Shown: positions 1,316 through 63,808 of the stretch, piece after piece
How positions within the stretch are numbered: position 1 is the stretch's first letter
How the letters are laid out: every line of letters begins with the position of its first letter
Assembly (NCBI RefSeq): GCF_001194135.2
Contig: NC_068984.1
Location: forward strand, 90,720,223 to 90,784,222
Length of the DNA: 64,000 bases
Source of the DNA: Octopus bimaculoides
Taxonomy: Eukaryota
Direction: 5' to 3'
Program-made: the position numbers and the translations under genes
Notes under the pieces: generated by a model
The model's database searches: none
What the model saw: the letters and a program-made list of their open reading frames with translations, nothing else
What the model was told of the DNA's origin: nothing

Positions 1316-1958
1316 NNNNNNNNNNNNNNNNNNNNNNNNNNNNNNNNNNNNNNNNNNNNNNNNNNNNNNNNNNNNNNNNNNNNNNNNNNNNNNNNNNNNN
1401 NNNNNNNNNNNNNNNNNNNNNNNNNNNNNNNNNNNNNNNNNNNNNNNNNNNNNNNNNNNNNNNNNNNNNNNNNNNNNNNNNNNNNNNNNNNNNNNNNNNN
1501 NNNNNNNNNNNNNNNNNNNNNNNNNNNNNNNNNNNNNNNNNNNNNNNNNNNNNNNNNNNNNNNNNNNNNNNNNNNNNNNNNNNNNNNNNNNNNNNNNNNN
1601 NNNNNNNNNNNNNNNNNNNNNNNNNNNNNNNNNNNNNNNNNNNNNNNNNNNNNNNNNNNNNNNNNNNNNNNNNNNNNNNNNNNNNNNNNNNNNNNNNNNN
1701 NNNNNNNNNNNNNNNNNNNNNNNNNNNNNNNNNNNNNNNNNNNNNNNNNNNNNNNNNNNNNNNNNNNNNNNNNNNNNNNNNNNNNNNNNNNNNNNNNNNN
1801 NNNNNNNNNNNNNNNNNNNNNNNNNNNNNNNNNNNNNNNNNNNNNNNNNNNNNNNNNNNNNNNNNNNNNNNNNNNNNNNNNNNNNNNNNNNNNNNNNNNN
1901 NNNNNNNNNNNNNNNNNNNNNNNNNNNNNNNNNNNNNNNNNNNNNNNNNNNNNNNNNN
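1316..1958. other. Assembly gap (643 N) followed by (AT)n
   Basis: Run of N; (AT)n at 1959-2000. Confidence 1.
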
Positions 1959-4483: not shown

Positions 4484-4780
4484 GATCATCATCATCAACA
4501 TCTTCCTTGTTGTTGTTGTTGTTGTTGAGTATGTTTTCCATGCTAGCAATGGGTTGGACAGGAGCTGGCCAGGCAGAAGACTACACCAGGCTTCTGTGTC
4601 TATTTTGGCACAGTTTTTACAGCTAGATGCCCTTCTTAACACCAACCACCCAGCAGAATGGACTGGGTGCTTTTTACATGGCACAAGCACAGGCGAGGCT
4701 AGTTTTGACATGGTTTTTACAGCTGGATGCCCTTCCATATGCCAACCACTTTACAATGTGGACTGGATGCTTGACAAGTG
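4484..4780 (-). mobile_element. SINE / RTE 3'-UTR-type repeat with (GAT)n tail
   Basis: Shares ttccatgct.gca.gggttgga and ctggatgcccttc.taa..ccaaccac blocks with copies near 9490-9670, 12853-13118, 25255-25440, 34500-34700, 47634 and 63154. Confidence 0.7.
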
Positions 4781-5711
4781 AAGTACCTGTCCAGGGTGGT
4801 GAACTAGCAGAATTGTTAGAACACCTGACACTGTCTTGCAATATTTGTTCTGGTTCTGTTGTTTTCTGAGTTCCTGTTGTGGCCAAGGTAGACATAATCC
4901 AATGTTCAGGTTAACACCACCACCTGATCCTTGGGTGCCATTAGTAGAGTCCATTTTGTTACAAGCATTAGGTCCAAGTCTCTGGTCTGAGGATAGCTAC
5001 AACTCTCCCTCCCACAAATTCCGGAAGCCTAGTATAAGGGCATGAGCAGTGTTTTCCCTCCTGACTAGATGTTAAATATATATTTATGTGCAATATATTT
5101 CATTTATATCCATATTCATTTTCAACAAACAAAGCAATAAATGAATAGATTAGAAGCACTGATACTATGGCAGTACAGAAACCATAAAGAGAATTGAAAA
5201 TAAGTCAAAACAGATCTCCTTAATTGTGGAGTTGTAGAAAAAGAACGTATTTATCCAACAGTTTAGTTGTGTTCTATTTAGTGATATTGTATGACTTCTT
5301 TATGGTGACATCTATTTTTAGTGTTTATGGAGTAAACATTATTCAATTTAAATCAACTGTATTCTAAGCTTAAATTTTCTTTTATTATTGATATTCTGGT
5401 TCACAAAATTTTACGACTTATATCTCAAGATTACTTTTAGCATGTAGGTAAACTAAAATGTATACTATAAACTTCTGCATCAGTTATGACTACAATTTAC
5501 ATTTGAAATATTGCCTAATACATTCACTAATGTATCTTCTAAACATCAAAAATCCTTGTAATAGATATTAGTTATGAAAATATAACCATTAAATTCATAA
5601 TAATTATTTGAAGCAAACCATGTATATTTTAAAGCTTCAGGATTGTTTTGAAACTAATTTATATTAGACTCGTGGAAATATGATTCTTTTATTTTACTTT
5701 TAATTTTACAG

Positions 5712-5751
5712 AGAAATCAAGGCTCTACAACAGATAGAAGATAATCCCTAT
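5712..5751 (+). CDS. CDK20: CDK20 exon (first visible): (R)EIKALQQIEDNPY
   Basis: ttttacag acceptor, gtaagt donor; matches CDK20 EIKALQEMEDNQY; joins the next exon in phase 0. Confidence 0.9.
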
Positions 5752-7207
5752 GTAAGTTAAATCTTGAAACTCCTACTTAGTTCATTATTCTTACACATTG
5801 TGTTACCAATAATATGGAAAAATAGTTTCATAATATGGTAGAAAAGCAGATTCAAACACTTTAAGGATGTGAATACACTATGAATTTAGAATTATGCAGA
5901 ACATGACAATAATGTTTATTTTCTTTCTTACACATTGTTTATACATACAAAAGTGATATCATCATAAAGGAGACAGGCCATAGCACTCCATATGTATTAC
6001 AAGATAAGGTTGTTAGATGGATGTATGCATCTTTTCTACATTCATTTAGTTCTTTTTTATTTTTATATTATTTTTATGGCTTAAAGGAGTAAAAGCAGTG
6101 CCCATGAACTTTGTAAGATCATATTATGACTGGAAATTTGGTTTGAATCCTCACAATAGAACAGAATAGACTAAAGGTATTCAAGGGCTGAATGGCAGTT
6201 TTAAAGAAATTGAGCTAAGACTGGTTCCTTAATATATCTTCACTCTCAGAAATATTTTCATTTTCTGCTATGTATTGTTTTACCAGTTACGTAATGTATT
6301 AAATTTACCAATATTTACTGTTGCTAATCAGTTTTATTAGCACCACTGCCATCCTATATTGAACCATAAAGAAATGAGAGTTTTCTGATCTGTTACATTG
6401 CTTGATTGAGTGTTTTTTTTTATGAACAATTATTATTATTATAATAATGTATTTTTTTAAATTTTTTTTTTTTTAATTTCCTTTTTTAGAAAATTTCCCA
6501 AATAATAAGCATGAAGCCCAGCTCTGTTTAACATGTTGTGCTTAGTAATCTATGTACTAATTACTATACTATAAATATAATTAAGTTACTCAGAAAATAA
6601 AATGCAATAGAAATATATTCATGCACATATGTACAAAGAAACAATTTATCTTAGGTTAGGCATGGGCCACCTTTCTTGAAAAGTAGGCCACATGAGACAT
6701 GACTCATTGTCAGGCAGGCTGTTTTGCTAAAAAAATTCAAAGTAACTTTTCATTAGGCATGCCATTCAGAAAATCTCAATGCTCATGACTGTTTTAGATA
6801 TTGATGGTTATAGTTGTTAGCAGTGCACATTTCATTCAAATAGTAACCAAATATGTAAAGGGAATATTTCTTTTGTTTTCATTTGTTAAATCCTTTATTA
6901 ACATTGGGTCAGATATTCTCTCTGACTCAATAATGGAATGATTGGGTAGAGATACACATAATATGTAGCCATGTTGAATAGTTGAATTAGAGGTATATGT
7001 AGTTAATGTCATTATTATAGTGCAGGACAGATATGAAATAACATTTAGATCTAAATTAATTTTTTTAATGATAATGCAATAGATAATTCATAAAACAGCT
7101 GACAACTGTAGTGAGTGATAGTTAACTGTTACCAGATATTTTCAGAACAGAGATTTGGCTTAGGTTTTAAAAAATTCATAAAGATTATAGAAATTGGTAT
7201 ATTTCAG

Positions 7208-7396
7208 GTTGTCAGACTTTTAGATGTCTTTCCTCATGGTGCTGGATTCGTATTGGTTTTTGAGTATATGCTGTCAGATCTGTGGGAAGTGATTCATGAT
7301 TCTGAGCATCCTCTCACTGAGTCTCAGCTAAAATCCTACCTACTTATGCTACTCAAAGGTGTTGCATTTTGTCACAAGAACAATATCATGCATCGT
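7208..7396 (+). CDS. CDK20: CDK20 exon: VVRLLDVFPHGAGFVLVFEYMLSDL...KGVAFCHKNNIMHR
   Basis: atttcag/gtaagt boundaries; 63 codons; FPHG.GFVL.FE.MLSDL is characteristic of CDK20/CCRK. Confidence 0.96.
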
Positions 7397-8363
7397 GTAA
7401 GTTTGTTTTATTTTACCTTTAATCCAATTTTTTTAAATTTCCAAGCTACATTTCTGGAAAAACGATTAATTTAACATATATAAATCACAGTAGGTGTGTG
7501 TATATTGACTAACACATACATTTCCACAATTCTCAACTAATTTTCACCAAACTTTACACAAACATTACTTATGTCCCAAGGATGGTCATGCAGTATAACA
7601 TATTGCCCAGAGCTCCTGCGTAAATGGACGTAAAAAGGACATAGTTGTTTTGTATGTAGGGTCTTCCTTACTTTTTTAATTTTTCTATAAAAGTGAAAGG
7701 ATTTTGTCTATTTATTTCGACTGCCCACTTGTGACTGTTATTAAATTGACTAGGCACACTGTACACAATGAATATCTAATACCAAACAACCTTAATCTCC
7801 ATATTTAAACTGCATTAAACTTTGGCAAGCTTACCTCTACTTATTCTGAGTTACTTGAAAGGTGATGTTCCCTTACCTTTCTTCTATTTGTTGATAACTG
7901 TTTACCTATCAATGCATTGTTTCACTTTAAGGATGCTTATTTATCCATCCATTATGACATTTTGACTGTTGTCCATTGTTTCAAATATGTTTCAGCATTG
8001 TCATTCTAGCCTTTTTTAAACAATCATATATGATTCATCCCAAAGAATCAACCTTTAAATAAGTTTTGCTTCCACTAGCAAAAGTTATACATATCTTTCA
8101 GAAAGCTCCATACCAATTTAACTTTATGTAGCATTTGTTGTTAGTTTATACGCAGGCTATGTGGGAAGACAGAATAAAGGGGATTTTGTTAGCTTATCTC
8201 TCCAAAAAAATAGCTCCCTTTGCTGTTGAAAAAAATAAGTTTGCGGAGGGGAAGTTTCAACGTCTTCCTTCAATTTCATTACACCATTTATATGGCTGTT
8301 TCTGACAAGAAATTTCGCTCTCATGTAAAACAACTATATTTTGTAGTCATTCCACTGTTAGGG

Positions 8364-9162
8364 AGTGACACTTCTTCACACAGCTCTCCTCATCCATATG
8401 CAGTATGTGACCATACCAGCTCAGTCATTTCTTTTGCACACCACATCTGATGCTTCTTATGTCCAACATTTCTCTCAAGGTGCTTACACTCTGCAGTGTG
8501 TGCACACTGACATTACACACCCAGCGGATCATACTAGCTTCATTTCCTTCAAGCCTACGCATGTCTTCAGCAGTCATGGCTCGTGTTTCAATGCCGTGTA
8601 GCATGGCAGTTCGTACACATGCATCATGCAATCTACTTTTCACTCTGAGCGAGAGGCTCTTTGTCACCAGTAGAGGTAGGAGCTTTCTGAACTTTGTCCA
8701 GGCTATTCTTATTCTAGTGGTAACACTCAGAGCATCCACCTCCACCACAGACTTGGTCGCCTAGGTAGCGGAAGCTATCAACGACTTCTAGTTTCTTCCC
8801 CTGGCATGTGATAGAATCAGTTTTCTGAGCATCTGCGGTGTTTATTTTCCCTGTGCATCTGCCGCACAAAAAAGCTAACCTTCCTTTGATGTTGCTGCAC
8901 CTCTTATGCATCCAAAGCTCACACTGGGTACATCTTATGGAATTTCTACCTACACCTTTCCTATAGCTCAAGCAGGGCCATCTACTTGAAGGGTTTTGTG
9001 ATGTGTTCGCCTTCCTACTTACTAGGACTTTGGTTTTTGCAACATTGACTCTGAGGCCCTTCAATTCTAAACCTTGCTTCCACACTTGAAATTTACTCTC
9101 TAGTACTGGTAGTGATTCCGCTATGAGAACAAGGTCATCAGCTTAGAGGAACTCCCAGGGGC
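8364..9162 (-). mobile_element. RTE-clade LINE reverse transcriptase 3' fragment (frameshifted)
   Basis: ELL(Y)ADDLVLIAES at about 9110-9155; ORFs 8714-9085 (GLRVNVAKTKVL...DSFRYLGD) and 8425-8748 (RIRIAWTKFRKLLPLL...). Confidence 0.88.
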
Positions 9163-9220
9163 ATATATATATATATATAAATTAATACAAACAGCCAGGT
9201 GCAATGTAATACCATAAAGG

Positions 9221-9395
9221 AAAAATTCAATCATCACTAAGAGTGATTATGGGTGCCAAAGCACCTACATTGCTAGAAATAAAAGTTAAAATACTCTTAA
9301 TATATTTACATTCTTCTTTCCGCATTTTAACTCTTATTTCTAACAATGTAGGTACTTCAGCACCTTTAGTCACACTTAGTGACGATTGAATTTTT
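9221..9395. repeat. 72-bp imperfect inverted repeat derived from HHR family-2 unit
   Basis: Arm 9221-9292 is the reverse complement of 9324-9395 with scattered mismatches; 31-nt spacer; sequence matches 12555-12620. Confidence 0.85.
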
Positions 9396-9964
9396 CCAAT
9401 ATATATTGATCTTGCCAATAAAAGGTTTGATATTGCCTCATGAAATAATGAGGTTATGCAAGAATGTAAAATTATATAATATCATGTTGGTGCTGCATTA
9501 ATGCACCCATGTTGGTGGCATGTAAAAAGTACTCACCACACTCAGCTAAGTGGTTGGTATTAGGAAGGGCATCCAGTCATAGAAACCATGCCACAACAGA
9601 GTTGGAGTCTGGACAGCTCTCTGCTAGCTAGTTCCATGTCAAACTATCATCCAACCCATGCCAGCATCAATTCTATCTCAGCTTCAGACAATCACATAGT
9701 CAATCAAGTGACCATGACCTGATCTAGAATGATACCAAATTACTTTGTTTTTATTGGACTGTTGAAAAAGAGCATTGGTGATAGAAGGTTCAAATTCACT
9801 GCATAATGATAGTTGCAGCAGTCCATTTGACTTTATTTTGCAAAGACCATGTTTACCAAGAATATTTGGTCAAGAAAGCCAATCTGGTATTAAAATCTCC
9901 TAAAAGGAAAATTTTGTTTTGACTGGGAATTTGGTTCAACAATATTTATAAATCAAAATAGAAC

Positions 9965-10454
9965 TTACCTTTAGCTGCATCTGCAGAACTAAGTGTTGGT
10001 GCATTCAGACTTACTAGTGTAGCATAATTTTGTAGGCCAAATGGGATTCACATTAACATTAGACAATCATTAAATCCATTTGGTAAGGATTCTAGTTTAT
10101 GTACAAATCATTACTAATAGTGAAACCCACACCAGATTTCCATTTTTCTGCTTCAGATTTACCAATCCAGAAGAAAGTGCACTCTCCAACAACTTCATTC
10201 AACTGACCAGAATTTAGTAGCCTTATCTCTGAAAGAGCAGCAATACTAACATTTTTACTTCTCGGAAACTGATCTAGAAGTGATGTTTTGCACTCAGGAC
10301 ACTTCTTGTGGTCCTGGGGGGTGTGTACATTCCAAGTTTCTATACTCATATCCATTTCTCTACCCTTTTCTCTTTGTTTTCTCATATTTTCTTGACTGTA
10401 TGGTTGAAAGTTCAGCCATTCACAGTATAATGACAGGATTGTGTGAGCCAGCAA
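9965..10454 (-). mobile_element. RTE LINE apurinic endonuclease N-terminal remnant
   Basis: ORF 10092-10454: IETWNVHT...IAALSEIRL...TFFWIGK...SGVGFTISN; a (Y)APTL-like segment follows near 9990. Confidence 0.8.
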
Positions 10455-11177
10455 TTTTTAGGACACCTTTTTTAACCCCCTCCCCACACAAGAGAAAGTA
10501 GTGCCATCCTAAATAGGCTGCTTTGTAGTTAAGAAGAGAACACATCAGTTTTACAGAATGGTCATCTACCTCTTAGCATCATACATGAAAAGCTCAAGCT
10601 AGGGACCTCCAGTGACTTTCTCCAACTGTCCCTGTTGCTATCACTTCATCACTGGAGGATTTGATTTGTTCTCATGTTGTCACTAAATGGCCTGCACTGT
10701 GAGTTTCTTTCAAGTGGAATTTGCTTGTGCTGGACAAAACACACTCTCTCCACCTAAAAAGTACATAACCTATGCTGGAGCACTGTGTGCCACTTGTCAA
10801 ATGCAGACTAGGTCACAGATCAAATACTTATAGTATGGCTTGATCTACCAATTGGCTGAGGGTTTGTTGCTCAACACATGCACAAACAAACACATACAAA
10901 GAATATAAAATATTAAAAATATATATATAAAAATGAATTGTGCTGTTGGTGATCTTTTTTTCCTTCTTTGAACTTTTCCTGTTTTCCTTTCCGACGGAGA
11001 GCTATGCTCAAAACATCAAAAACTCTCTCTTTTTACTGAGCATCAAACTAATACATTCCATGTGCATATCCTCTAGTTGTTTGGTTATTGTTATTTTTAA
11101 TGTTCATTTATTCAATTTTACTATATATAATATATATAGACAACAGTATGCAATGTTTTACCAAAAAAGGAAAACTA

Positions 11178-12188
11178 TTGGGTTGGCAAGAAAGTAATTT
11201 TGTTTTTTTAGTGTGAAATTTCTTCATACAAAGAATGAACTTTAATCAATTATATATTTTCCATTTTGTTCGATGACCTTTTGCCATCATTCTGTCCACT
11301 TCATGATTCTTGTACTCATAGAACTTCTGGTCCTTATTTGCCAATTCTGGCCATTTTTCTTTGATTGCTTCCTCCAGTTTCATTAGTTGTTGACAGTAAA
11401 CATCTGAATTGATCATTTGATTCCTTGGAAGCAACTCAAAGTACACGACACCTTTGTAATCCTACCGATTCAACAGCATGACCTTTTTTTTAATGGAATT
11501 CAGCTTTCAATGTGTTTTGTGTTGGTTCATTATGCTTGGACTATGATCGTTTTGGATTGATGCTATTGTAGACAATCCATTTTTCATCACTAGTGATGAT
11601 TCATTTCAAAAAAAGGTTTGATTTCATTGCATTTGAGATCCTTATTGCAAATATTGATTCATTGTGTTAAGTGAATCTCTTTCTATGTATGTAGAACCCA
11701 AATATCGAGCTTCTTAATGACTCCCAAGACATTTTAAGTGATTTTCAATTGTGTGTGATACATTTAACTTTTCTGCAATCTCTCACACAGTTATATGACA
11801 ATCAGATTCAATTATGGCTTTGATTCGGTCATCATCAACTTCAGGAGGTTGGTTGTCTTTGAGTGAAAAATCTCTAGAAAGGAATTTTTTAAACCATTTC
11901 TGATGTGCATTCTCTTAAGCAATCAGCACCATAAACTTCACATATCTCTTTGTGAGCCTCAGCAGGTTTCTTGCCTTTATAGAAATAAAAAAAGCAAAAT
12001 ATGGTGAAGATGTTCGTTTTTGCACCCCATGTTAAAATTGACACTGAACTAACAGTTGTGAACTAAATTACATGCAATTTGCTTCTAAAGTAAGCTAAAA
12101 GTAACAGCTATCAAATGTCAAAAGTCATCCAAAAAAATCGTAACTCTATCTATTTGTGAAGACCGAAATTACTTTCTAGTGAACCCAA
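11178..12188 (-). mobile_element. Mariner transposon, internally deleted, TA-flanked
   Basis: TIRs ttgggttggcaagaaagtaattt and (rc) ttgggttcactagaaagtaattt; TA at 11176-77 and 12189-90; ORF 11246-11446 YFELLPRNQMINSDVYCQQL; homologous to 60009-61250. Confidence 0.92.
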
Positions 12189-12343
12189 TATACTTGTCAC
12201 TAAATATGACTAGGGTGTTAGAAAGAAACACTTACATTGCTAGAAATAAGGGCTAAAATTCTTTAATGCTGTAGTCAAAGCACATAATTGTATACATACT
12301 TACTGACAGGGACTATAATTGCCTGAAAACACCAATCGAGAAT

Positions 12344-12396
12344 TCCTTATACTGACAGGTCAGTTTCAGCAATTTTCGTTGCCTCATCAGTAAGGA
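12344..12396 (-). ncRNA. Type I hammerhead ribozyme, intact core
   Basis: - strand: UCCUUA CUGAUGA GGCAA cgaaaa UUGCU GAAA CUGAC cu GUCAG UA^ UAAGGA. Stem I 6 bp, stem II 5 bp, stem III 6 bp, GUA triplet; predicted cut between 12350 and 12349. Confidence 0.88.
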
Positions 12397-12852
12397 CTGG
12401 CTCGACTTCAACAGATTCCAGACTGAATTCTCTGTCAGTATATATGTTTTCACCATATAAAAATCTATGGATGATTTATTCAATCACTAATGTGTATACA
12501 TAAAATTAATATAGACAGCCATGTGCAATGTTTTACTGAAAAAGGAAACTATAATTGTCACTAAATATGACTAGGGTGTTAGATACACCTACATTGCTGG
12601 AAATATGAACTAAAAATGCTCTAATGTTGTAGTTGTATGAGTTACATAATTTGAAACAGGTTTATTATTACTTATTTTACTGAATTACTATTTTTAAATC
12701 TCACAATGAGAGATATTCAGCTACAGTACTTTGTAGTAAAAACTGTTTGCCAACATAACATAGCAGTCCTGGTTTAGGATGAATGTTGCTGTAATTTGGC
12801 CCCAGCAGACATCGTCTCCAGCTAGCTATACGACACAATCTGTGTCCTTATA

Positions 12853-13118
12853 TTTTCGAGGCTCCTGTGCAAGTGGCACATAAAAAACAGCATTTGAGCA
12901 TGGCTGTTGCCAGTACTGCCTGACTGGTCCTCATGCCAGTGGCACGTAAAAGCACCCACTACACTCTTGGAGTGGTTGGTGTTAGGAAGGGCATCCAGCT
13001 GTAGAAACTCTGCCAAATCAGATTGGAGCTTGGTGTAGCCATCTGGTTCACCAGTCCTCAGTCAAATCGTCCAACCCATGCTAGCATGGAAAGCGGACGT
13101 TAAACGATGATGATGATG
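12853..13118 (+). mobile_element. SINE with (GAT)n tail inserted in family-1 copy B
   Basis: gtggttggtgttaggaagggcatccagctgtagaaac...ggacgttaaacgatgatgatg; the flanks rejoin as in copy C (tgtgtccttata|..gaatctagcacc). Confidence 0.85.
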
Positions 13119-13151
13119 GAATCTAGCACCCCCACTCAGCTCAAAACAATA

Positions 13152-13196
13152 TCTGTGTATCACGATTTCCGAGTTATTTCCCTTCATCAGCACAGA
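13152..13196 (-). ncRNA. Type I hammerhead ribozyme (family 1, copy B), core intact, stem II weakened
   Basis: - strand: UCUGUG CUGAUGA AGGG aaauaa CUCG GAAA UCGUGA UA^ CACAGA; AUA triplet; 10.1-11.1 is an A.G mismatch. Confidence 0.78.
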
Positions 13197-13316
13197 ATAA
13201 TTGTTTGGCTAGAGGTAGCGCTGCCAAATTTCTGTTTGAAATATATAGTTTTCAAAGTGACAACTAGTCACTGATCTATAAATTAGAGAATTACTATTTT
13301 TAAATCTCAAACAATA

Positions 13317-13692
13317 TAAGGACATAGATCGTGTTGTATTGCCAGATGTCTCCTGCTACTAAATTACAGCAACATTGCCATGTTATGTTGGCAAACAATC
13401 TTTACTACAAAGTACTGTTGTTGAATATCTCTCGTTGTGAGATACATTTCAAACGGGAATTTGGCAGCACCACCGCTAGCCAAACAATTATTCTGTGCTG
13501 ATGAAGGGAAATAACCCAGAAATTGCGAGACACAGATATTGTTTTGAGCTGAGTTGGGGGTGCTAGATTCCCTATAAGGACACAGATCATGTCATATAGC
13601 CAGCTGGAAACGATGTCTCCTGGGGTTAAATTACAGCAACATTCATCCTAAACCAGGACTGCCATGTTATGTTAGTAAACAATCTTTACTAC
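13317..13692 (+). mobile_element. HHR family-1 unit (copy C), about 1.3-1.4 tandem units, inverted relative to copy B
   Basis: gccatgttatgtt..aaacaatctttactac at 13377 and 13661 (284-bp period; about 60 bp deleted relative to B); reverse complement of 12700-13250. Confidence 0.8.
13492..13536 (+). ncRNA. Type I hammerhead ribozyme (family 1, copy C), degenerate
   Basis: TCTGTG CTGATGA AGGG aaataa CCCA GAAA TTGCGA GA CACAGA; U16.1->G at 13529. Confidence 0.75.
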
Positions 13693-14637
13693 TTATTTTA
13701 TGTTGGCGAGTCATAGGAGTTATCCACAATGATCTCCCTGGGCAAACATTCTAGAAGCTTCTAAAACATTGGATTTATGTCCCTTTTACTAATCCAAATG
13801 AGCCATAGAATGTTCTAGGATGTAATTTAGTCATCAGGTGGAACCACCAGTCTTTGGGCTACATGTTGAATAGCCGCAGAACTTTTATCTCTCTTCAGTC
13901 ATCAGACTTCATGCTAGACACATCTCTGTGTTCAGAGCACATAGATTTTGCTATACATGGTCCAAGGAATCAAAAATGCCTTAGTGGCGCAACCGTGTAT
14001 CCCCGAACTATTTAAGTTGCATAACATGTGCACGACTTCCTTTTACATGAGAAATAGACCTAAGTGGCATACAAAATTCTTTTGTACATTTTAATTTACC
14101 TTCTACAGATGGAACGTGACAAGGCAAAATAGTATGTACACGTTCTTCATTTATGTGCCGCTTCAACCAAAGCATCTTATTGGTGAATTCTTACCTGGTT
14201 CTAAATTGGTATTAAATTATTTGGGAAGTTCAAGAATGGCTCTTTCATTTATTCCAATCAAGAATGCATTTTACCTTTTGTAACATGAGGATTTTTGCTT
14301 CTGAATTAACCTCTTGTTCCAGCAGTAACAAGGCCAAGTTATAGCCTTAACTCTTATTACTGTGGCCTACTCCATTGTTACATAGTCAAAGCATATAATT
14401 GTATACATTGGGTAATTATAGTCCCTGTCAGTATATATTTATTTGAATAATTCAAGTAGAGGAAAACCACTGACCAATGTTTTCATTTTAAAATTATATT
14501 TTTACCACTTTAATGTAAGATATCTGTTTATTCAAAATTCTTTATTTAATTGAAAAGGTAAGCACAACCATTACAATCAACTCATTATAAGGATATTCTT
14601 TTTTTAACTTATAGAAAATAAACTTCATTTCTTGCAG

Positions 14638-14759
14638 GATTTGAAACCTGCTAATTTATTAATAAGTTCCACTGGACATTTGAAAATTGCTGATTTTGGT
14701 CTAGCCAGAGTTTTCCAGAACAGTAATAACTGTGAGTACAGTCACCAAGTGGCTACAAG
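14638..14759 (+). CDS. CDK20: CDK20 exon: [40 protein letters not shown](R)
   Basis: cttgcag/gtaaga; completes HRD, carries DFG and the T-loop. Confidence 0.97.
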
Positions 14760-14964
14760 GTAAGATTGTCAATTTATGTAAAGTTTACTGTTATAACTGA
14801 ACTTGGGTCTACTTTGTCCTCTTTCCATTTACACCATCTTCATGGCCTTCATGAAGGCATGAAGATAGTGTAAAGAGGAAGCAAAGCCCACACACACATG
14901 CACAAAAGAGCAAAGATACAACACTTCTAAAAACTGCATATTTTACTACATAAACAGGGTGTAG

Positions 14965-15158: not shown

Positions 15159-15223
15159 TACTTCATAAATAATTCATTTGCTTATCCATATTTTACTTTT
15201 AGTTTAATCTTCTTTTTTTGTAG

Positions 15224-15286
15224 GTGGTACAGAGCTCCAGAACTTTTGTATGGAGCTAGGAAGTATGATGAAGGTGTTGATTTATG
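15224..15286 (+). CDS. CDK20: CDK20 exon: [20 protein letters not shown](W)
   Basis: tttgtag/gtaaat; APE motif; phase 2 in and out. Confidence 0.97.
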
Positions 15287-16125
15287 GTAAATATATTTTC
15301 AGAGTAATTTCCTTCAATGAAAATTGTAATTAAAATGAATTGACTGTAATTTATAATTTTCCAAACAGTAGAAAGGTTAATTCATTAAAGACTACATTTA
15401 TCTGAAAAAGAGAGATTGTAAACTGCTGTGGAAAGATTTTGTTGGTTACTGTATAAACTCTAATTCTAAACTGTCATCTTAACCAGCATTAGCTTTTCTG
15501 AAATAATTGTAATTAAAAGAATTTAATCCACTTTTTAGAAGTTTTCAATGGTGAATTAATGATAAAGAAAAAAAAAATCCTTAAATTATTAGATTTTAAA
15601 TGTCCTATAGTTTTTAAGTAGCAGTGTAGTAAAGTAAGTAGAATTATTACTGTGATGGTGGCAATAAATGAGATATGTTGCCTTACCATTTTTTTGGGGT
15701 GGGTGCAGCCTGTTAATATCAGTGTGAAATTAAGGAAAAGACTATCCCCCATCTCTGTTCCCAAGTGCAGTTTACTGGTTTCTCTGTATCACTATGATCT
15801 TGTTATATTTACAAAAGAATATAAGATGGAACAGAAAATAAAATAAACACTTTTAGTATTAAAGTTTTACTACTCTTTTGTAAAAGTATTTGAGTTGTCA
15901 TTAACTGGAATACATTAACATTTGTTATTAAGAGGTGTTTTTAGTGTCACATAACCAGCAATAATCTTTGTTGCTTTCTCCAGGCCTTTGTTTAACTCAA
16001 GATAAATGGTGCAGGATTAAAATGAAGTACTTGGGTGTCAGAGTTGTCAACCTCATTAGGAGGCACTAATATCCATAGGATTTTGTTTATGTTAATTTTG
16101 TTACATTGTTCATCAGTGTTTGAAT

Positions 16126-16363: not shown

Positions 16364-16415
16364 GGCTGTAGGCTGTATTTTTGGAGAGTTATTGAACAAC
16401 TCCCCACTTTTCCCA
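16364..16415 (+). CDS. CDK20: CDK20 exon: AVGCIFGELLNNSPLFP
   Basis: ctttcag/gtatgt; frame consistent with neighbouring exons. Confidence 0.96.
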
Positions 16416-17007
16416 GTATGTCTACTTACATCATTTCATTGTTATATGTTAACATTACATGTTTTGATATAATTTTATTTACATATTTATCACCTCTTGT
16501 TTCAATCTTGTTGCCCAATTTCAATACTTCTCTCAATTTGTTGTTAAAATAGCATTATCCTAAATTATATATTCCAATGACCAAGGATATTAAATGTCTT
16601 CCTTTTGGCTAAAGAGTAATGAATTCTTATTCTCTTGCTGGTGCTGTGAAGATCCCTTGAGGAGGTTCTGAGTCACACACACCCCAATTGTCTAACAATA
16701 TAGCAAACCAGATATGAGGGACTATCTCAATGAAGTAGCAAACATACCTAAAAGCTTATTGCTTTTAGTTACCACTGCTGATATACTGTGTTTATCAGCA
16801 GATATTTTCACTAATATACTTTTTGTTTTAATAATTTGTTGATTGTTCTTTTCTAATTTACAAATTAATATGAATAAAAACTAACCCTAGACTCTTAAAT
16901 ATTTTTCTCTTAAGTGAAGCATAAGAAGGTATTAAGTGAATTTAATGACTTGCTTTTATGTTTAAATAAATAAATAAATCTGTTGTTTTTTTGTTTCCTC
17001 CTATTAG

Positions 17008-17079
17008 GGTGATAATGATATTGAGCAGCTGTGTTGTGTATTGAGAGTTTTGGGGACACCAACTGAGAAAACATGGCCG
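17008..17079 (+). CDS. CDK20: CDK20 exon: GDNDIEQLCCVLRVLGTPTEKTWP
   Basis: ctattag/gtaatc; 24 codons. Confidence 0.96.
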
Positions 17080-18675
17080 GTAATCATTGTTAAATTTTAG
17101 TGTTTTTCTAATAAACCATAGTATGTTGCAGTAGGTTAGTTTTGAGGACTGTTATTAAGCATTTGGTGCACTAAATGCCTTACAATATTTGATTCAGTTC
17201 CTCTGACTTCAAGTCTCATTAGACTTGGTTTACCCTTTCATATAGTTAAACAATAAGTATTTCTATCATTACAACTATTAGTCTTATATCTGGCAAGAAT
17301 CAGTGTCATGCATTTCTCATACAGAGCTTCTATAGTGTCTCGATTAGAATATGTCTTTCATCATGGTTTAATCTTTTTCTTTATAAAAAGAAAGCACAAT
17401 AATATGGGGTAACTAAAAAGATGATATAGTACAAATACCAGTTAATACAGTATAACTATAAAGCCAATAACTTCCACTATTGTAACTGCCAGTACTACTG
17501 AGTATATTAAAATTGTAAACACCACCTGATAGTATGTAAATATGACCTAATATAATGTAATGGAAAATACAGTACCTAAAGCTACTCTATTGCACACCTG
17601 TCCAAATTATAGCATCATGCAAAACAAGTTATTCTCAATCATTTGTTATTTTCAATACCAAGGCAATATTATATTTTTCCCATCTCTGTTTCTCTTTCTC
17701 TCTTCCACACACACACACACACATTTGAAGTTCTCAGTACCTTAAAAAATTCCTTAAAAGATATTAGATATAGATAACAGAGAAAGCTTACATATGATGC
17801 TACTTTCAATTTAAGTGGTTTAATTTAGTCTTGAGTAACAAACGTTTGTTTACCATTTTATTTCTCTTTCATTTATTCTATATTTGAAATTTCAAAAGTA
17901 GAACACTTAGAAAGTGTCATTTGGAGGCTATATTTAGTGGTAATGAATTGGACAAAATGCCTTGCAGTATTTAGTTATGGCCCTTCACATTCTGAGTTTA
18001 AATCTCATCCAGACCATCTTTGCTTTTGATTCTTCTAGGTTTGACAAAATAAAGTACCAGTCAAGTACTAGAAATGATTCAATCTAGTATATCCTGTCTC
18101 CCAAAAAGTAAACCTTGTGCCAATTTTAGAAATCGATATTTAAGTACAGGCATAATGATGTGTTAAATCGTTTGCTTTATAACCACATTGTCCTAAGTTC
18201 CATGCTACTGTTAAGCAACTTGGCAAAGTGTCCACAACCACAGTCTCAGCCTTATGAGCAAAATTTAGTTGTCAGACCCTGAAAATTAATTTGCTTGCTT
18301 GCTTTTGTAAGATTGAAAATATTAGTAAATTAAATGAAAATCTCAGTTGCATCTCTTTATGACCTCTTTCAAGGTCAATAAAATAAATACCAGGTTAAAA
18401 TTTTGGTGCCCTAGCATGGCTTCAGTCTAGAGCTAAAACTAGTAAAATCTTCTCCTCTCACACATGCCAAAAACTGACAGAATAGGATTCCTTACATTTC
18501 AACTAAGTTGTTAGTGGTAGGAAGGACATCTAACTGTAAAATTAAATCTAACAATATTTAAATAGATGTAAAACAGTTAAGAGCAATTTCTTCACTCATC
18601 TATGTAGTTCTGACAATGAACCAAAAAAATTTGTTATGCAATTTATTTTAAAATTTTTTTATTTTGTTATTGAAG

Positions 18676-18831
18676 GGAATGTCCGAATTACCAGATTTTA
18701 AGAAGATTACTTTCCCAGAAAATCCAGCAATTCCTATCAAAGAAATAGTTCCAGATGCTTCAGCTCATGCATCAGATCTACTGGGAAAGTTTCTTGTGTA
18801 TCCTTCAAAAGAGAGGATAGCAGCCAAAAAG
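18676..18831 (+). CDS. CDK20: CDK20 exon: GMSELPDFKKITFPENP...DLLGKFLVYPSKERIAAKK
   Basis: ttgaag/gtacat; 52 codons; matches CDK20 ELPDYNKISF...RIAAS. Confidence 0.94.
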
Positions 18832-20050: not shown

Positions 20051-21205
20051 TGAAATATTCTATATTGTATATTTTTTCAAATGTTTGTATTAAACTTTCT
20101 TTGGTTATCACATTGTTTATGGATTGAATGTTGTATATTTTTTATGGACAATTAGTGAATAAAAGATACATTATAAGAATATATTTCTGTTAAAAACATT
20201 ACATTTTACATATCATTTAACATTGCCCTCAATAGTAGTCCATGAAATATTTTGTTTAACTTCATACTATAAACAGCATGCTTTATTCATTCATTTACTA
20301 ATCATTTATCATTTCTGAATCTCATAATTTACTGTGGGTAAACAAACTATTTGAATCCCTCTTGACAAGATGGCAGAACCAATTAAATATTGTTAATATT
20401 TATTATTGCACTATATAGAAATTGTATAGGCCACCATAGTGTATTGTCTGTTTATTGTTGATATGTAATTTGCTCCCCTTGATACATTTTAAAACATGTT
20501 TTACATTAGTAAATATATTTGATATAATTAAAGTACATGGTGAGGGTGTGCACATGCTAGGGTAGATAGTGTGTTACTTATTTTGCTATAAGTAGATGTC
20601 AGAAAGTCAATGTTACATAGATTATATTTCTGCTTAATAAATTTTTCACAACAACCAATTTAAATACATATTACTCTAAGCACTGTGCCAATTATTACTC
20701 TCTCTCTCATTTTCAAAATAAATAAATAAATGCTTCAATTATTACAAACTCAAAAAAAAAAAAATGTTTTCTTAATTAGAATCTTAAAATGGAACATTTT
20801 AAATTTTCAGAAAGTGGAACATTTCAGACTACTCCATCCTGTGTTTCATATATAAAGATCATGAGACATTATATACAAATATATATTTTGTATATAATGT
20901 TGTATAAATTTAGATCTTTAATAATAATAAAAGATGGGGTAGTTTAGTTCTTAAGTTTAATGTGCAACCCTGATTTGTAGGTTTAAAAATCTGACCCCCC
21001 CCCCCCCAAAAAAAAACATGTATTTTGAATTAAAAAAGGTATGAAAATTCTTATCTTCAGAATAAAAATTTCTGAAATTATGAGCATAATCTTCCGTTAT
21101 TGGATCAATTTTTAAGGTACTTTAGGCTATACACATTAGGTTATACACATGAAAGAAATTTTTTATCATACTCTTATACCTGCGATTTTCTTTTACTATT
21201 TGCAG

Positions 21206-21385
21206 GCTTTACTTCATCCTTACTTTTTCAGTGTTCCTCTTCCGTGCCACCATTCAGATTTACCAGTGCCTTACAGAGGTTGGCAGATGAGACGTAGACA
21301 ACAAACACATGACTACAATCCAGATATTCCTTTGGAAAAATCTCTGCTACCTCTTGAAGCATTAACTTTTTTTATGAATCAATAA
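21206..21385 (+). CDS. CDK20: CDK20 terminal exon: ALLHPYFFSVPLPCHHSDLPVP...FFMNQ*
   Basis: tttgcag acceptor; ALLH.YFF..PLP.H.S.LP and D.PLE.SL match the CDK20 C-terminus; TAA ends at 21385. Confidence 0.93.
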   Translation, partial: ALLHPYFFSVPLPCHHSDLPVPYRGWQMRRRQQTHDYNPDIPLEKSLLPLEALTFFMNQ

Positions 21386-62304: not shown

Positions 62305-62685
62305 AGCAATGTTAATTCTCTAAATGAAGTATTAACAGTAACTGCATGATAAAGTGTAGTATATTGCCACTTAAGTGTGGCTGACCCCTAGGGGTGGATG
62401 TTACTGTTGCTTTTAGCCCCAGGAGGACATCTCCTCCAGCTGGATTATCGACACACGACTGTGTCCTGTTTGCCAAGGGAAGTTATCCCTCTCACCACGA
62501 TCTGCAGCACGAACGGATCCGGATTTCAGGGTTATTTCCCTTCGTCGGCGTTCGATAGCTGCTGACCTTGGTGAGAGAGACAAAAACCTGGCAATCTTAT
62601 ATCTACTTTTCCAGTGAAATTCTTCACTGATATCGAAAAGGTGAAAACAAGCAATGTTAATTCTCTAAATGAAGTATTAACAGTA
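62305..62685 (-). mobile_element. HHR family-1 unit (copy A): 345-bp monomer plus perfect 36-bp terminal repeat, within (TA)n
   Basis: agcaatgttaattctctaaatgaagtattaacagta at 62305-62340 and 62650-62685; TA runs on both sides; homologous to 12682-13309. Confidence 0.85.
62504..62562 (-). ncRNA. Type I hammerhead ribozyme (family 1, copy A), U4->C variant
   Basis: - strand: gcagc ua u CGAACG CCGACGA AGGG aaauaa CCCU GAAA UCCGGA UC^ CGUUCG u gcugc; perfect stems; palindrome AUCCGGAU; AUC triplet. Confidence 0.82.
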
Positions 62686-63153: not shown

Positions 63154-63808
63154 CATCATCATCATTTAACGTCCATTTTCCATACTGGCATGGGTTGGAT
63201 GGTTTGACTGGTGACTGGCAAGCCAGGAGGCTGCACCAGGCTCCAATCTGATCTGGCAAGGTTTCTACAGCTGGATGCCCTTCCTAATGCCAACCACTCT
63301 GAGAGTACAATGGGTGCTTTTTACATTCCACTGGCACAGGAGCCAGTCAGGTGGCACTGGCATCAACCCATGCTTGAATGGTGCTTATTACGTGCCACCA
63401 GCACAGATGCCAGTCAGGTGGCACTGGCATGGGCCACAACTACAATTTCCATTTTGATTTTGATCTTGATTTGATATTACTTGACTCAATAGGTCTTCTC
63501 AAGCACAGTGTATCAGACGATGAGTCCAGGGTACTTTCAAATGGGCCGGTTATGCGACACTGGTATAGGTTATGCCTGTGATCTCACTATACTTGCTTGG
63601 TCTTCTCAATCACAGCATATCTCCAAAGGTCTCGGTCTCTTGTCATTCCCTCTATGAGGCCCAACGTTCAAAGGTCGTGCTTCACCACCTCTACCCATGT
63701 CTTCTTGGGTCTCCCTCTTCCATGGGTTCCTACCACTTCTTCACACAGCTCTCCTCATCCATATCCAGTACATGACCATACCAACGCAGTTGTCTCTCTT
63801 GTACACCA
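63154..63808 (-). mobile_element. RTE LINE extreme 3' end plus 3'-UTR with (GAT)n tail
   Basis: ORF 63730-63948 contains QERQLRWYGHVLDMDEESCVKK; UTR matches 47634-49320. Confidence 0.8.

What the first reader, a model, noticed from the sequence alone, without database searches (positions are those of the whole stretch)
11107..13692. Candidate retrozyme-like system: two families of ~350-bp non-coding repeats, each with a hammerhead ribozyme, clustered in a CDK20 intron
Seen: three HHR folds within 1.2 kb (12344-12396, 13152-13196, 13492-13536) and a fourth at 62504-62562. They sit in units of 361 bp (family 2) and about 341-345 bp (family 1). All units are more than monomer length (terminal repeats or partial tandems), show no recognisable ORF, and have a palindromic or near-palindromic stem III. 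Established: type I HHRs with minimal palindromic stem III occur in Penelope-like element pLTRs, in satellites (Schistosoma Sm-alpha, newt satellite 2) and in metazoan non-LTR retrozymes, which yield circular RNAs. Inference: these are cephalopod retrozyme-like elements that self-cleave to monomer RNA, circularise and reinsert by reverse transcription slightly beyond one round. I cannot tell whether these particular families are already catalogued.
Basis: partly seen in the sequence, partly recalled or inferred. Interest (0 to 1): 0.85.

Follow-up and report, generated by a model that had tools for sequence, protein, structure and literature searches.

The report
Dead hammerhead-ribozyme retroelement copies in octopus
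An intron of the octopus CDK20 gene holds old, broken copies of small non-coding jumping elements that each carry a self-cutting hammerhead RNA motif. This is a kind of element already known from other animals, here seen in a cephalopod and inserted in the manner of Penelope-like retrotransposons.

Summary
The repeats and hammerhead (HHR) motifs are at the stated coordinates and are not chance: 2 strict type I HHR hits against 0.05 expected per 64 kb.

Only two of the four motifs have a complete catalytic core (12344-12396 and 13152-13196, both minus strand). 13492-13536 has lost U16.1. 62510-62554 reads CCGACGA, a U4-to-C change.

The host is an Octopus, probably O. bimaculoides. Three motifs lie in CDK20 intron 7397-14634; the fourth lies about 41 kb past the gene.

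Units are 361 bp (family 2) and 345-348 bp (family 1, two subfamilies about 62% identical). Between the family 1 subfamilies, 5 of 6 stem I pairs changed on both sides and still pair.

Every locus is a dead-end insertion with one HHR per strand, so none can release a monomer or a circle. The intron copies are shared with O. vulgaris and decay neutrally.

The insertion anatomy matches Penelope-like element (PLE) integration: (TA)n targets, 22-36 bp terminal redundancy, two classes of 3' end 48-57 nt apart, and head-to-head inverted copies.

A second copy of the 62-kb subfamily, 99.4% identical with the same C4 core, lies elsewhere in O. bimaculoides and has no counterpart in the orthologous O. 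sinensis locus.

Verdict: new members of a known kind (metazoan non-LTR retrozymes, PLE-dependent). A circular RNA step is untested.

The parts
12555..12633 (-). Family 2, 5' partial unit. It corresponds to unit positions 280-361 in HHR sense.
   Evidence: 83% identical to 12194-12275. Present in the O. vulgaris ortholog.
12191..12554 (-). Family 2, full 361-bp unit. GC 0.33.
   Evidence: Self-BLAST. 96.7% identical to O. vulgaris L001 60189-60544. Whole-unit fold z-score -2.0.
12344..12396 (-). Family 2 type I HHR with a complete core: UCCUUA / CUGAUGA / GGCAA-CGAAAA-UUGCU / GAA / ACUGAC-CU-GUCAGU / A / UAAGGA. Predicted cut lies between the complements of 12350 and 12349.
   Evidence: Descriptor hit. 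Weak Rfam Hammerhead_3 match at 26.7 bits. 53/53 identical in O. vulgaris.
11103..11177 (-). Family 2, 3' partial unit (unit positions 3-76). It is split from the full unit by a DNA transposon.
   Evidence: 75-81% identical to the end of the unit.
11178..12188 (.). Mariner-like DNA transposon inserted into the family 2 element. It is an interruption, not part of the element. Terminal inverted repeats are TTGGGTTGGCAAGAAAGTAATTT and its near-complement, with a TA duplication at 11176-77 and 12189-90.
   Evidence: Sequence. A related copy at 60402-61204 encodes the Mos1 HTH_48 domain at 62.6 bits. The insertion is shared with O. vulgaris.
12682..13309 (-). Family 1 'arm L': one unit of about 348 bp plus an exact 22-bp terminal direct repeat (12682-12703 = 13288-13309). 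A SINE interrupts it.
12860..13118 (.). SINE inserted into arm L (an interruption). Absent from the O. vulgaris ortholog.
   Evidence: Other copies at 4535-4684, 9515-9667, 25281-25438, 47634-47742 and 63154-63406.
13152..13196 (-). Arm L HHR: UCUGUG / CUGAUGA / AGGG-AAAUAA-CUCG / GAA / AUCGUGAU / A / CACAGA. The core is complete, but 10.1/11.1 is A/G.
   Evidence: Descriptor hit. The O. vulgaris ortholog reads CUAAUGA, so G5 is lost there.
13316..13692 (+). Family 1 'arm R': an inverted copy of about 1.36 units, head to head with arm L. A segment of about 62 bp is deleted here but present in O. vulgaris.
   Evidence: 89-91% identical to arm L in reverse complement. O. vulgaris arrangement.
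13492..13536 (+). Arm R degenerate HHR. It keeps CUGAUGA but position 16.1 is G, which breaks the A15.1-U16.1 pair, and 10.1/11.1 is A/A.
   Evidence: The O. vulgaris ortholog keeps U16.1.
12670..12679 (.). Candidate target-site duplication ACTTATTTTA flanking the whole inverted family 1 composite. The second copy is at 13691-13700.
   Evidence: This is an inference: the right flank is deleted in O. vulgaris, so it cannot be cross-checked.
62305..62685 (-). Family 1, subfamily 'E3': a 345-bp unit plus an exact 36-bp terminal repeat, inserted in a (TA)n microsatellite. GC 0.45, CpG observed/expected 0.63.
   Evidence: Fold z-score -7.6, with stem I continued by a long helix. About 62% identical to arm L over 281 nt.
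62510..62554 (-). E3 HHR-like motif: CGAACG / CCGACGA / AGGG-AAAUAA-CCCU / GAA / AUCCGGAU / C / CGUUCG. U4 is C. Stem III is a perfect palindrome.
   Evidence: Relaxed descriptor. The homodimer cofold gives a double HHR with an 8-bp intermolecular stem III. The same core is in the second copy at L003.
9165..9395 (.). Family 2 fragment. A minus-sense piece spans the unit junction (9165-9301) and an inverted piece lies beside it (9324-9383). (TA)n flanks both sides and there is no HHR. It sits inside a LINE remnant.
   Evidence: Orthologous copy at L001 55211-55435.
14383..14442 (.). Small inverted pair of family 2 pieces (unit positions 258-283 and 232-263). It lies in a stretch that is absent from O. 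vulgaris.

Best explanation
These are dead-end genomic copies of short, non-coding retroelements that carry a type I hammerhead ribozyme. There are two families, and one has two subfamilies. They belong to the metazoan non-LTR retrozyme class, now regarded as non-autonomous derivatives of Penelope-like elements (PLEs).

Likely life cycle, all inferred:
1. Master copies exist as tandem or partial-tandem arrays elsewhere in the octopus genome and are transcribed.
2. A PLE reverse transcriptase / GIY-YIG endonuclease supplied in trans nicks AT-rich or (TA)n DNA.
3. It starts cDNA synthesis at one of two internal sites about 50 nt apart near the unit junction.
4. It copies a little more than one unit. 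This leaves 22-36 bp terminal redundancy and, often, a head-to-head inverted partner copy.

Role of the HHR, also inferred:
- The HHR may trim multimeric transcripts to unit length: as a monomer in family 2, as a dimer in family 1.
- That would allow circles to form. But it is probably not needed for insertion.

Shown here: the motif anatomy, the covariation, the unit structure, the termini, the targets, orthology with O. vulgaris, and the young second copy.

Not shown here: transcription, cleavage, circularisation, and which enzyme mobilises the elements.
For: HHR motifs are real:
- 2 strict hits against 0.05 expected by chance.
- Across five family 1 sequences, stem I has 5 of 6 pairs changed on both sides and 100% of cells paired. 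Overall 88% of cells pair, against 18-49% when partners are slid by 1-3 columns.

The family 1 motif has the canonical metazoan type I design: helix I 6 bp, helix II 4 bp, helix III 2 bp capped by the 4-nt palindromic loop CCGG (PMC4209133).

Units are short and cyclic:
- Every copy runs through the unit junction straight into the next unit, with no ORF in between.
- There are no long ORFs and no Pfam hits.

PLE-type insertion signatures, as described in PMC8557442 and PMC11167929:
- (TA)n targets at three insertions.
- 22-bp and 36-bp terminal redundancy.
- Two 3'-end classes 48-57 nt apart, each seen in both subfamilies.
- Head-to-head inverted copies, with HHRs about 300 bp apart on opposite strands, as reported for truncated PLEs in PMC4209133.

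Mobility:
- A 99.4% identical E3 copy lies at another O. bimaculoides locus.
- The 119-kb O. sinensis locus L004, orthologous to L003, has no E3-type HHR; what aligns with the sequence just before the L003 copy is a microsatellite tract.
- E3 keeps its CpGs (observed/expected 0.63) where the window as a whole has 0.18.

Penelope families are annotated in Octopus (PMC13282606).
Against: - No tandem array with two or more same-strand HHRs was seen in about 340 kb of octopus sequence.
- Copy number is unknown, because no cephalopod genome could be searched at the DNA level.
- No PLE ORF or pLTR was available for comparison, so the link to PLEs rests on insertion anatomy and the literature.
- Rfam models miss family 1 entirely. 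Its 10.1-11.1 pair is A-U or mismatched rather than G-C.
- The 3'-end classes rest on only four insertions.
- There is no expression, cleavage or circular RNA evidence.
Confidence: 0.75

Rival explanations
1. Family RNAs self-cleave at the HHR, are ligated into circles of 345-361 nt, and are reverse-transcribed slightly beyond one turn of the circle. That overshoot would give the 22-36 bp terminal redundancy.
For: - Unit plus 22 bp and unit plus 36 bp fit an RT that meets its own start on a circle and displaces only a short stretch.
- Element ends are not at the HHR cut site: E3 is cut at element position 170/171, and its ends are at 1 and 381. A plain cleaved linear monomer is therefore excluded as the template.
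- The E3 monomer is highly self-paired, z -7.6, like retrozyme circles.
- Mussel retrozymes of 350-390 nt do form abundant circles (PMC7229834).
Against: - The young E3 subfamily has C at invariant U4 in two independent insertions. By established mutagenesis (my own knowledge: Ruffner et al. 1990) this should nearly abolish cleavage, and without cleavage there is no circle.
- Arm R is about 1.36 units long, not one turn plus a little.
- Two discrete 3' ends 48-57 nt apart are explained directly by PLE internal initiation on unprocessed RNA. HHR-dead mutants insert normally in vitro (PMC11167929).
- No circular RNA data exist.
Confidence: 0.3
2. The units are only 5'-truncated 3' ends, or solo pseudo-LTRs, of autonomous RT-encoding PLEs. 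They are not a separate non-autonomous family.
For: - PLE insertions are heavily 5'-truncated.
- PLEs carry HHRs in their pLTRs.
- They form inverted pairs and tails (PMC8557442, PMC4209133).
- Most single HHRs in genomes were attributed to truncated PLEs (PMC4209133).
Against: - In all the longer copies the sequence after the unit end is the unit start again, with a period of 345-361 bp. A PLE partial tandem would place a 3-4 kb ORF between repeats.
- No RT or GIY-YIG ORF lies nearby.
- The family 1 HHR has the canonical design (helix I 6 bp, helix II 4 bp). The PLE min-HHR design has helix II of 7-8 bp and helix I of 4-5 bp (PMC4209133).
Confidence: 0.12
3. They are ordinary SINE-like or satellite repeats moved by LINEs or by local duplication. 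On this view the HHR-like motifs are incidental or long dead and play no part in the life cycle.
For: - Rfam fails to call three of the four motifs.
- All family 2 pieces lie within 5.3 kb of one another, which could reflect local rearrangement.
- L1-type twin priming also produces inverted copies.
Against: - Chance expectation is 0.05 per 64 kb.
- Compensatory changes preserve stem I between subfamilies that are only about 62% identical.
- No poly(A) or simple-repeat 3' tail is present.
- The (TA)n targets and the two-site 'tail' are PLE traits (PMC8557442, PMC11167929).
Confidence: 0.06
4. The family 2 HHR at 12344-12396 has been co-opted for a host function at this locus, for example processing an antisense transcript of the CDK20 intron.
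For: It is 53/53 identical between two Octopus species, where the flanking intron is 94.6% identical.
Against: - About 2.9 substitutions are expected in 53 nt, so zero has a probability of about 0.05. That is not significant.
- The whole unit is 96.7% identical, so the HHR does not stand out.
- A mariner has disrupted the element.
- The HHR is antisense to the gene.
- No transcript evidence exists.
Confidence: 0.03

Closest known systems
Metazoan non-LTR retrozymes (Cervera & de la Pena 2020, PMC7229834), e.g. the Mytilus galloprovincialis repeats of 350-390 bp
   Same: - Non-coding units of 345-361 bp.
- GC below 50%.
- One type I HHR per unit.
- The host is a mollusc.
- The predicted RNA is self-paired, strongly so for E3.
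- PLEs occur in the same genus.
   Different: - Only monomer or partial-tandem copies are seen here; no array with an HHR in every unit.
- Circular RNA is not shown.
- One subfamily carries a U4-to-C core.
- Cephalopod families are not described in the papers I could search.
Penelope-like elements and their pseudo-LTR hammerheads (PMC4209133, PMC8557442, PMC11167929)
   Same: - Insertion into (TA)n.
- Partial tandems.
- An optional terminal 'tail'.
- Two 3'-end classes.
- Inverted 5' partner copies.
- HHRs on opposite strands a few hundred bp apart.
- HHR activity dispensable for insertion.
   Different: - No RT/GIY-YIG ORF.
- The repeat period is 345-361 bp rather than 3-4 kb.
- The interval between the two 3'-end classes (the PLE 'tail') is 48-57 nt, against the reported 30-40 bp.
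- HHR design is canonical (helix I 6 bp, helix II 4 bp) rather than the PLE min-HHR.
Satellite-borne type I HHRs acting as dimers (newt satellite 2, Schistosoma Sm-alpha; reviewed in PMC6155905)
   Same: Family 1 has a helix III of 2 bp capped by a palindromic tetraloop. Two copies are predicted to pair into a double HHR.
   Different: Those are long tandem satellites. Here the copies are dispersed single insertions, and family 2 has a stable 5-6 bp helix III that should work as a monomer.

Membership tests
Hammerhead ribozyme, type I | Conserved core C3 U4 G5 A6 N7 G8 A9 ... G12 A13 A14, the A15.1-U16.1 pair, and H17 | tested here: met
   Met for 12344-12396(-) and 13152-13196(-). Not met for 13492-13536 (16.1 is G) or 62510-62554 (U4 is C).
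Hammerhead ribozyme, type I | Three helices around the core, with helix I open and helices II and III closed by loops, supported by covariation | tested here: met
   Stems of 6/5/6 bp and 6/3-4/2-4 bp. Family 1 stem I has 5 of 6 compensatory pairs, and 88% of cells pair against 18-49% when slid. In effect this is one contrast between two subfamilies.
Hammerhead ribozyme, type I | Match to the curated Rfam hammerhead models at gathering score | tested here: not met
   0 hits at gathering score. Family 2 reaches 26.7 bits against Hammerhead_3, gathering score 48.5. Family 1 gets no hit even in 111 nt.
Hammerhead ribozyme, type I | Self-cleavage at the predicted site | not testable with these tools
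   Needs in vitro transcription or mapping of RNA ends.
Metazoan non-LTR retrozyme | Non-coding unit of 150-450 bp with GC below 50% | tested here: met
   Units of 361, 345 and about 348 bp; GC 0.33-0.45. No ORF and no Pfam hit.
Metazoan non-LTR retrozyme | Tandem repeats with a type I HHR in each unit (two or more HHRs on one strand) | tested here: not met
   At these loci there are only 1.06-1.5 units and one HHR per strand. They match the 'monomer derivatives' of 10.64898/2026.07.22.740005. Arrays elsewhere in the genome could not be searched.
Metazoan non-LTR retrozyme | [quoted passage not shown] | not testable with these tools
   No octopus RNA data were accessible.
Metazoan non-LTR retrozyme | Highly self-paired predicted monomer RNA | tested here: inconclusive
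   E3 z -7.6. Family 2 z -2.0 and the arm R unit z -2.2.
Metazoan non-LTR retrozyme | Co-occurrence with PLEs, and sequence relation to their pLTRs | not tested
   Penelope families are reported in O. vulgaris (PMC13282606). No octopus PLE sequence was available for alignment.
Penelope-like element (autonomous) | ORF encoding RT plus GIY-YIG endonuclease between pseudo-LTRs | tested here: not met
   No ORF of 90 aa or more between 10454 and 24671. The only weak RVT_1 hit (8717-9142) belongs to a LINE remnant with a YADD-type C-terminus.
Penelope-like element (insertion signature) | (TA)n target preference, partial tandems, 30-40 bp tail from two RT start sites, adjacent inverted 5'-truncated copy | tested here: met
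   (TA)n at the window E3, the L003 E3 and 9165-9395. Redundancy of 22 and 36 bp. 3' ends in two classes 48-57 nt apart. Inverted pairs at 12682-13692, 9165-9395 and 14383-14442. Sample size is small.

The most novel reading that the evidence does not exclude
The E3 subfamily (62305-62685, plus a 99.4% identical copy in the first intron of a bicarbonate-transporter gene) is a recently mobile hammerhead element whose ribozyme core carries C at invariant U4 in independent insertions. If the master copy has it too, these elements transpose in vivo without self-cleavage. They would be 'ex-retrozymes', moved by the PLE machinery from unprocessed RNA. Alternatively, C4 is a naturally tolerated core variant.
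Probability: 0.3. Interest if true: 0.5.

Novelty: new member of a known kind. Interest (0 to 1): 0.35.

Why it matters
It extends HHR-bearing non-autonomous retroelements to cephalopods. It also supplies clean genomic examples linking retrozyme-type units to PLE-style integration: microsatellite targets, the two-site tail, and inverted partner copies.

The young subfamily with a U4-to-C core gives a direct test of whether ribozyme activity matters for mobility in vivo. That has so far been addressed only in vitro, for one anole PLE.

For annotation, these units are probably among the unclassified repeats of octopus genomes, and Rfam-based scans will miss them.

For the CDK20 gene itself, nothing suggests a function.

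Tried and rejected
- **Rfam** at gathering score and at E up to 10: only one weak type III alignment for family 2. I rejected that topology because its stem I is 3 poor pairs, whereas the type I fold has a 6-bp stem I and a 5-6 bp stem III.
- **Pattern scans** of metagenome and viral collections for both HHR cores: the single hit, L002, is a chance match inside unrelated sequence.
- **Protein-route search.** I searched the protein database with concatenated stop-free translations of the units, to reach nucleotide copies indirectly. It gave one hit, which led to the second E3 copy.
- **Failed look-ups.** P0010, P0121 and P0122 were not on record.
- **L004 never appeared in the Python sandbox**. 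I examined it only with pattern, covariance-model and Rfam tools.
- **Covariance model R1** found no further family 1 HHRs in 339 kb. I make no copy-number estimate: the window was chosen for having these elements, and L003 was found through one.
- **Selection on the family 2 HHR:** not significant.
- **Purging of sense-strand HHRs from the CDK20 pre-mRNA:** rejected. The O. vulgaris arm R keeps a formally complete motif on the sense strand.
- **Arm cores created by CpG decay of a CCGACGA ancestor:** considered. Only position 4 matters, since N7 is free. The more economical reading is an ancestral CUGAYGA with U4-to-C in E3. Stem I differences include transversions that CpG decay cannot explain.
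- **Is 14383-14442 the continuation of the family 2 element, split off by a 1.75-kb insertion?** Left open. The intervening 13693-14382 is unique sequence.
- **Is the E3-derived exon in UniProt model A0A0L8G4E9 this window's copy?** Rejected. Exon 1 is not in the window, and the copy lies at L003.


Full report
**1. Where we are**

The window carries a CDK20 gene on the plus strand. Exons lie at 5710-5754, 7208-7396, 14635-14760, 15219-15287, about 16365-16420, 17008-17079, 18679-18831 and 21203-21376.

- The joined peptide is 100% identical to 'cyclin-dependent kinase 20-like [Octopus vulgaris]' and to an O. bimaculoides isoform.
- The O. vulgaris locus L001 (OX597817.1:100167330-100249924) is only about 87-97% identical to the window, block by block. 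The window therefore comes from another Octopus species.
- A 99.4% match to an O. bimaculoides locus makes O. bimaculoides the likely source.
- The finding lies in intron 7397-14634. The fourth motif, at 62.5 kb, is about 41 kb past the last exon.

**2. The hammerhead motifs**

- 12344-12396: UCCUUA / CUGAUGA / GGCAA-CGAAAA-UUGCU / GAA / ACUGAC-CU-GUCAGU / A / UAAGGA.
- 13152-13196: UCUGUG / CUGAUGA / AGGG-AAAUAA-CUCG / GAA / AUCGUGAU / A / CACAGA.

Simulated sequence gives 0.05 hits per 64 kb, and none has stems this long.

The other two motifs are defective:

- 13492-13536(+) has G at 16.1 and A/A at 10.1/11.1.
- 62510-62554(-) reads CCGACGA, so U4, part of the uridine turn (PMC6155905), is C.

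Rfam reports nothing at gathering score. It gives one sub-threshold Hammerhead_3 alignment for family 2 (26.7 bits). It gives nothing for family 1, even in a 111-nt search.

Family 1 matches the 'canonical' metazoan type I design described in PMC4209133: helix I 6 bp, helix II 4 bp, helix III 2 bp with the palindromic tetraloop CCGG.

- After the 6-bp stem I comes an asymmetric internal loop (UAU/U or UUAU/UA) and then a further helix.
- Two E3 motifs cofold into a double hammerhead with an 8-bp intermolecular helix III.
- Family 2 has a stable 5-6 bp helix III and should not need a partner.

Covariation was counted on an alignment of the five family 1 motifs: three from the window and two O. 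vulgaris orthologs (A1).

- In stem I, 5 of 6 pairs changed on both sides between E3 (CGAACG/CGUUCG) and the arms (UCUGUG/CACAGA), and every cell pairs.
- Over the whole structure 88% of cells pair, against 18-49% when the partners are slid.
- This amounts to one evolutionary contrast. It spans subfamilies only about 62% identical and includes transversions.

**3. The repeat units**

*Family 2, read in HHR sense (minus strand)*

- The layout is 12633-12555 (unit positions 280-361), then 12554-12191 (a full 361-bp unit), then 11177-11103 (positions 3-76). That is about 1.4 units with a single HHR.
- It is split by a 1011-bp mariner-like transposon (11178-12188) with terminal inverted repeats and a TA duplication. 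A related copy at 60402-61204 encodes a Mos1 HTH domain.
- Two HHR-less fragments lie nearby. 9165-9395 is an inverted pair flanked by (TA)n. 14383-14442 is a tiny inverted pair.

*Family 1*

- Arm L (12682-13309, minus sense) is one unit of about 348 bp plus an exact 22-bp terminal repeat. It is interrupted by a SINE (12860-13118) that O. vulgaris lacks.
- Arm R (13316-13692, plus sense) is an inverted copy of about 1.36 units lying head to head with arm L. O. vulgaris retains a segment of about 62 bp that the window has deleted.
- A 10-bp direct repeat, ACTTATTTTA, flanks the whole composite. This suggests one insertion event.
- E3 (62305-62685) is 345 bp plus an exact 36-bp repeat inside a (TA)n tract.

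*Features common to all copies*

- The sequence after the unit end is the unit start, so the template was a tandem or circular form of a short unit.
- None has an ORF of 90 aa or more nearby, and none of the stop-free stretches has a Pfam match.
- GC is 0.33-0.45.
- The E3 monomer folds far better than shuffles, z -7.6. The other units reach only z about -2.

**4. Age and selection**

- The family 2 element, its mariner insertion, the 9165-9395 fragment and the inverted family 1 pair are all present at the orthologous O. vulgaris positions. They predate the species split.
- The orthologous HHRs decay differently. Arm L is CUGAUGA in the window but CUAAUGA in O. vulgaris. Arm R has lost U16.1 in the window but keeps it in O. 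vulgaris.
- The family 2 HHR is 53/53 identical, but the flank is 94.6% identical, so zero changes has a probability of about 0.05.
- I see no evidence of constraint at this locus.

**5. A second, young E3 copy**

- Translations of the units, used as a probe, hit one protein: an old O. bimaculoides gene model for an anion exchanger. Its second exon is the antisense strand of an E3 copy.
- The RefSeq model of that gene lacks the exon.
- The locus (L003, CM046604.1:53954828-54027984) holds an E3 copy at 17359-17691(-). It is 99.4% identical to the window's copy and has the same CCGACGA core.
- That copy also abuts a (TA)n-type microsatellite. It ends 44-48 nt earlier at its 3' side, and its 5' side runs into a 3.8-kb assembly gap.
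- The orthologous O. sinensis locus (L004) has no E3-type HHR. At the position matching the sequence just before the L003 copy it has a microsatellite tract. The gap in L003 prevents mapping the other flank.
- E3 keeps its CpGs (observed/expected 0.63), where the window as a whole is at 0.18.
- E3 is therefore a recently mobile subfamily, and it moved with C at position 4.

**6. Termini**

In HHR sense, the four family 1 insertions end at two sites:

- Site 1: ...TACTAC(ACT)| in arm R and the L003 E3 copy.
- Site 2: 48-57 nt further on, in the window E3 and arm L.

Each class includes a member of both subfamilies. The two copies that end at site 2 begin 12-29 nt after the site 1 position of the preceding unit, which produces the 22-36 bp redundancy. 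The ends are not at the HHR cut site (E3 position 170/171).

Three published observations bear on this:

- Frangieh et al. (PMC11167929) showed that a PLE reverse transcriptase starts at two adjacent internal sites on unprocessed RNA. This creates the optional genomic 'tail'. HHR-dead mutants insert normally in vitro.
- Craig et al. (PMC8557442) list partial tandems, an adjacent inverted 5'-truncated copy, a 30-40 bp tail and (TA)n targets as PLE hallmarks.
- Cervera & de la Pena (PMC4209133) noted paired HHRs 100-700 bp apart on opposite strands.

All of these are seen here.

**7. Interpretation**

The best reading is that these are dead-end copies of non-autonomous HHR-bearing retroelements of the non-LTR retrozyme class (PMC7229834). 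They were probably mobilised by PLE enzymes; a 2026 preprint argues that retrozymes derive from PLE pLTRs (10.64898/2026.07.22.740005).

- The local copies cannot yield monomer or circular RNA, because each strand has one HHR.
Unit plus 22-36 nt could be the footprint of one turn around a circle.
- It is weakened by three observations: the C4 core of the mobile subfamily, the 1.36-unit arm R, and the two-site 3' ends.
- The 'truncated PLE' rival is weakened by the 345-361 bp periodicity and the canonical HHR design.

**8. What is known**

- The accessible literature describes such elements in cnidarians, mussels, other invertebrate phyla and many vertebrates (PMC7229834; 10.64898/2026.07.22.740005).
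- For cephalopods I found only a count of 235 Rfam Hammerhead_1 hits in the giant squid genome (PMC6962438), and repeat annotations that list Penelope families without mentioning ribozymes (PMC13282606).
- Searches combining retrozyme or ribozyme with octopus terms found nothing more.
- I could not consult Dfam or Repbase.
- This is a new member of a known kind.

**9. Limits**

- No cephalopod genome could be searched at the DNA level. Copy number, the existence of arrays, the relation to octopus PLE pLTRs and the family-wide state of the core are all unknown.
- There are no expression, cleavage or circular RNA data.
- The inferences about termini rest on four insertions.

Noticed in passing
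window 12733-12852 / 13118-13246 versus 13442-13692: The two family 1 arms form an inverted repeat that is 89-91% complementary. Rfam even scored it as a miRNA-like hairpin at 13184-13503. Any CDK20 pre-mRNA would fold it into long double-stranded RNA, a plausible substrate for the heavy A-to-I editing known in octopus.
   Followed up: partly
L003 17359-17691 (O. bimaculoides CM046604.1): The UniProt gene model A0A0L8G4E9 (anion exchanger) uses the antisense strand of an E3 copy as a coding exon, with splice-like ttttag| and |gtgaga edges. Its first exon also resembles a repeat. The RefSeq model XP_014784164.2 has a different first exon and lacks both, so this is probably an annotation artefact.
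   Followed up: yes
L003 17692-21512: A 3.8-kb assembly gap starts right at the 5' side of the young E3 copy. It could hide a tandem array or only microsatellite sequence.
   Followed up: no
window 13693-14521: An 829-bp stretch, unique within the sampled sequence, is missing from the O. vulgaris ortholog. There, arm R is joined directly to sequence matching window 14522 onward. This is a deletion in O. vulgaris or an insertion in this lineage.
   Followed up: partly
window 60402-61204 and 11178-12188: Two copies of one mariner family. The 60-kb copy still encodes the Mos1 HTH_48 domain (62.6 bits) and a partial Transposase_1 domain.
   Followed up: partly
window 8428-10457 (-): A LINE remnant with a reverse-transcriptase C-terminal part (weak RVT_1 hit...ADDLVLIA...) and an N-terminal part that resembles an endonuclease domain by eye (no Pfam hit). 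The family 2 fragment (9165-9395) and a SINE (9515-9667) interrupt it.
   Followed up: partly
window 55856-56465 (-): A piggyBac-type transposase fragment (DDE_Tnp_1_7, 60.9 bits). A related copy, 89% identical, lies in L003 7448-8538.
   Followed up: no
whole window: CpG observed/expected is only 0.18 across the window. This strong depletion makes the CpG content of a repeat (E3 0.63, arms 0.44, family 2 0.30) a rough clock for its age.
   Followed up: partly
window 1316-1958: A run of 643 N (assembly gap). The long ORFs listed across it (1275-2122) are artefacts.
   Followed up: yes
L003 43455-43677: A diverged (about 69%) E3-like fragment, again arranged as an inverted pair and lacking the HHR part.
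   Followed up: no
L004 64610-64810 (O. sinensis): A near-perfect palindrome of about 190 bp, which looks like a MITE or foldback element, close to the orthologous site that lacks the E3 copy.
   Followed up: no
window 12433-12443 versus 12344-12354 (minus sense): In family 2, UAUACUGACAG upstream of the HHR is an exact complement of CUGUCAGUAUA, which spans the 3' strand of helix III and the cut site. This 11-bp alternative helix would compete with the active fold, and it appears in the minimum-free-energy structure of the whole unit.
   Followed up: partly
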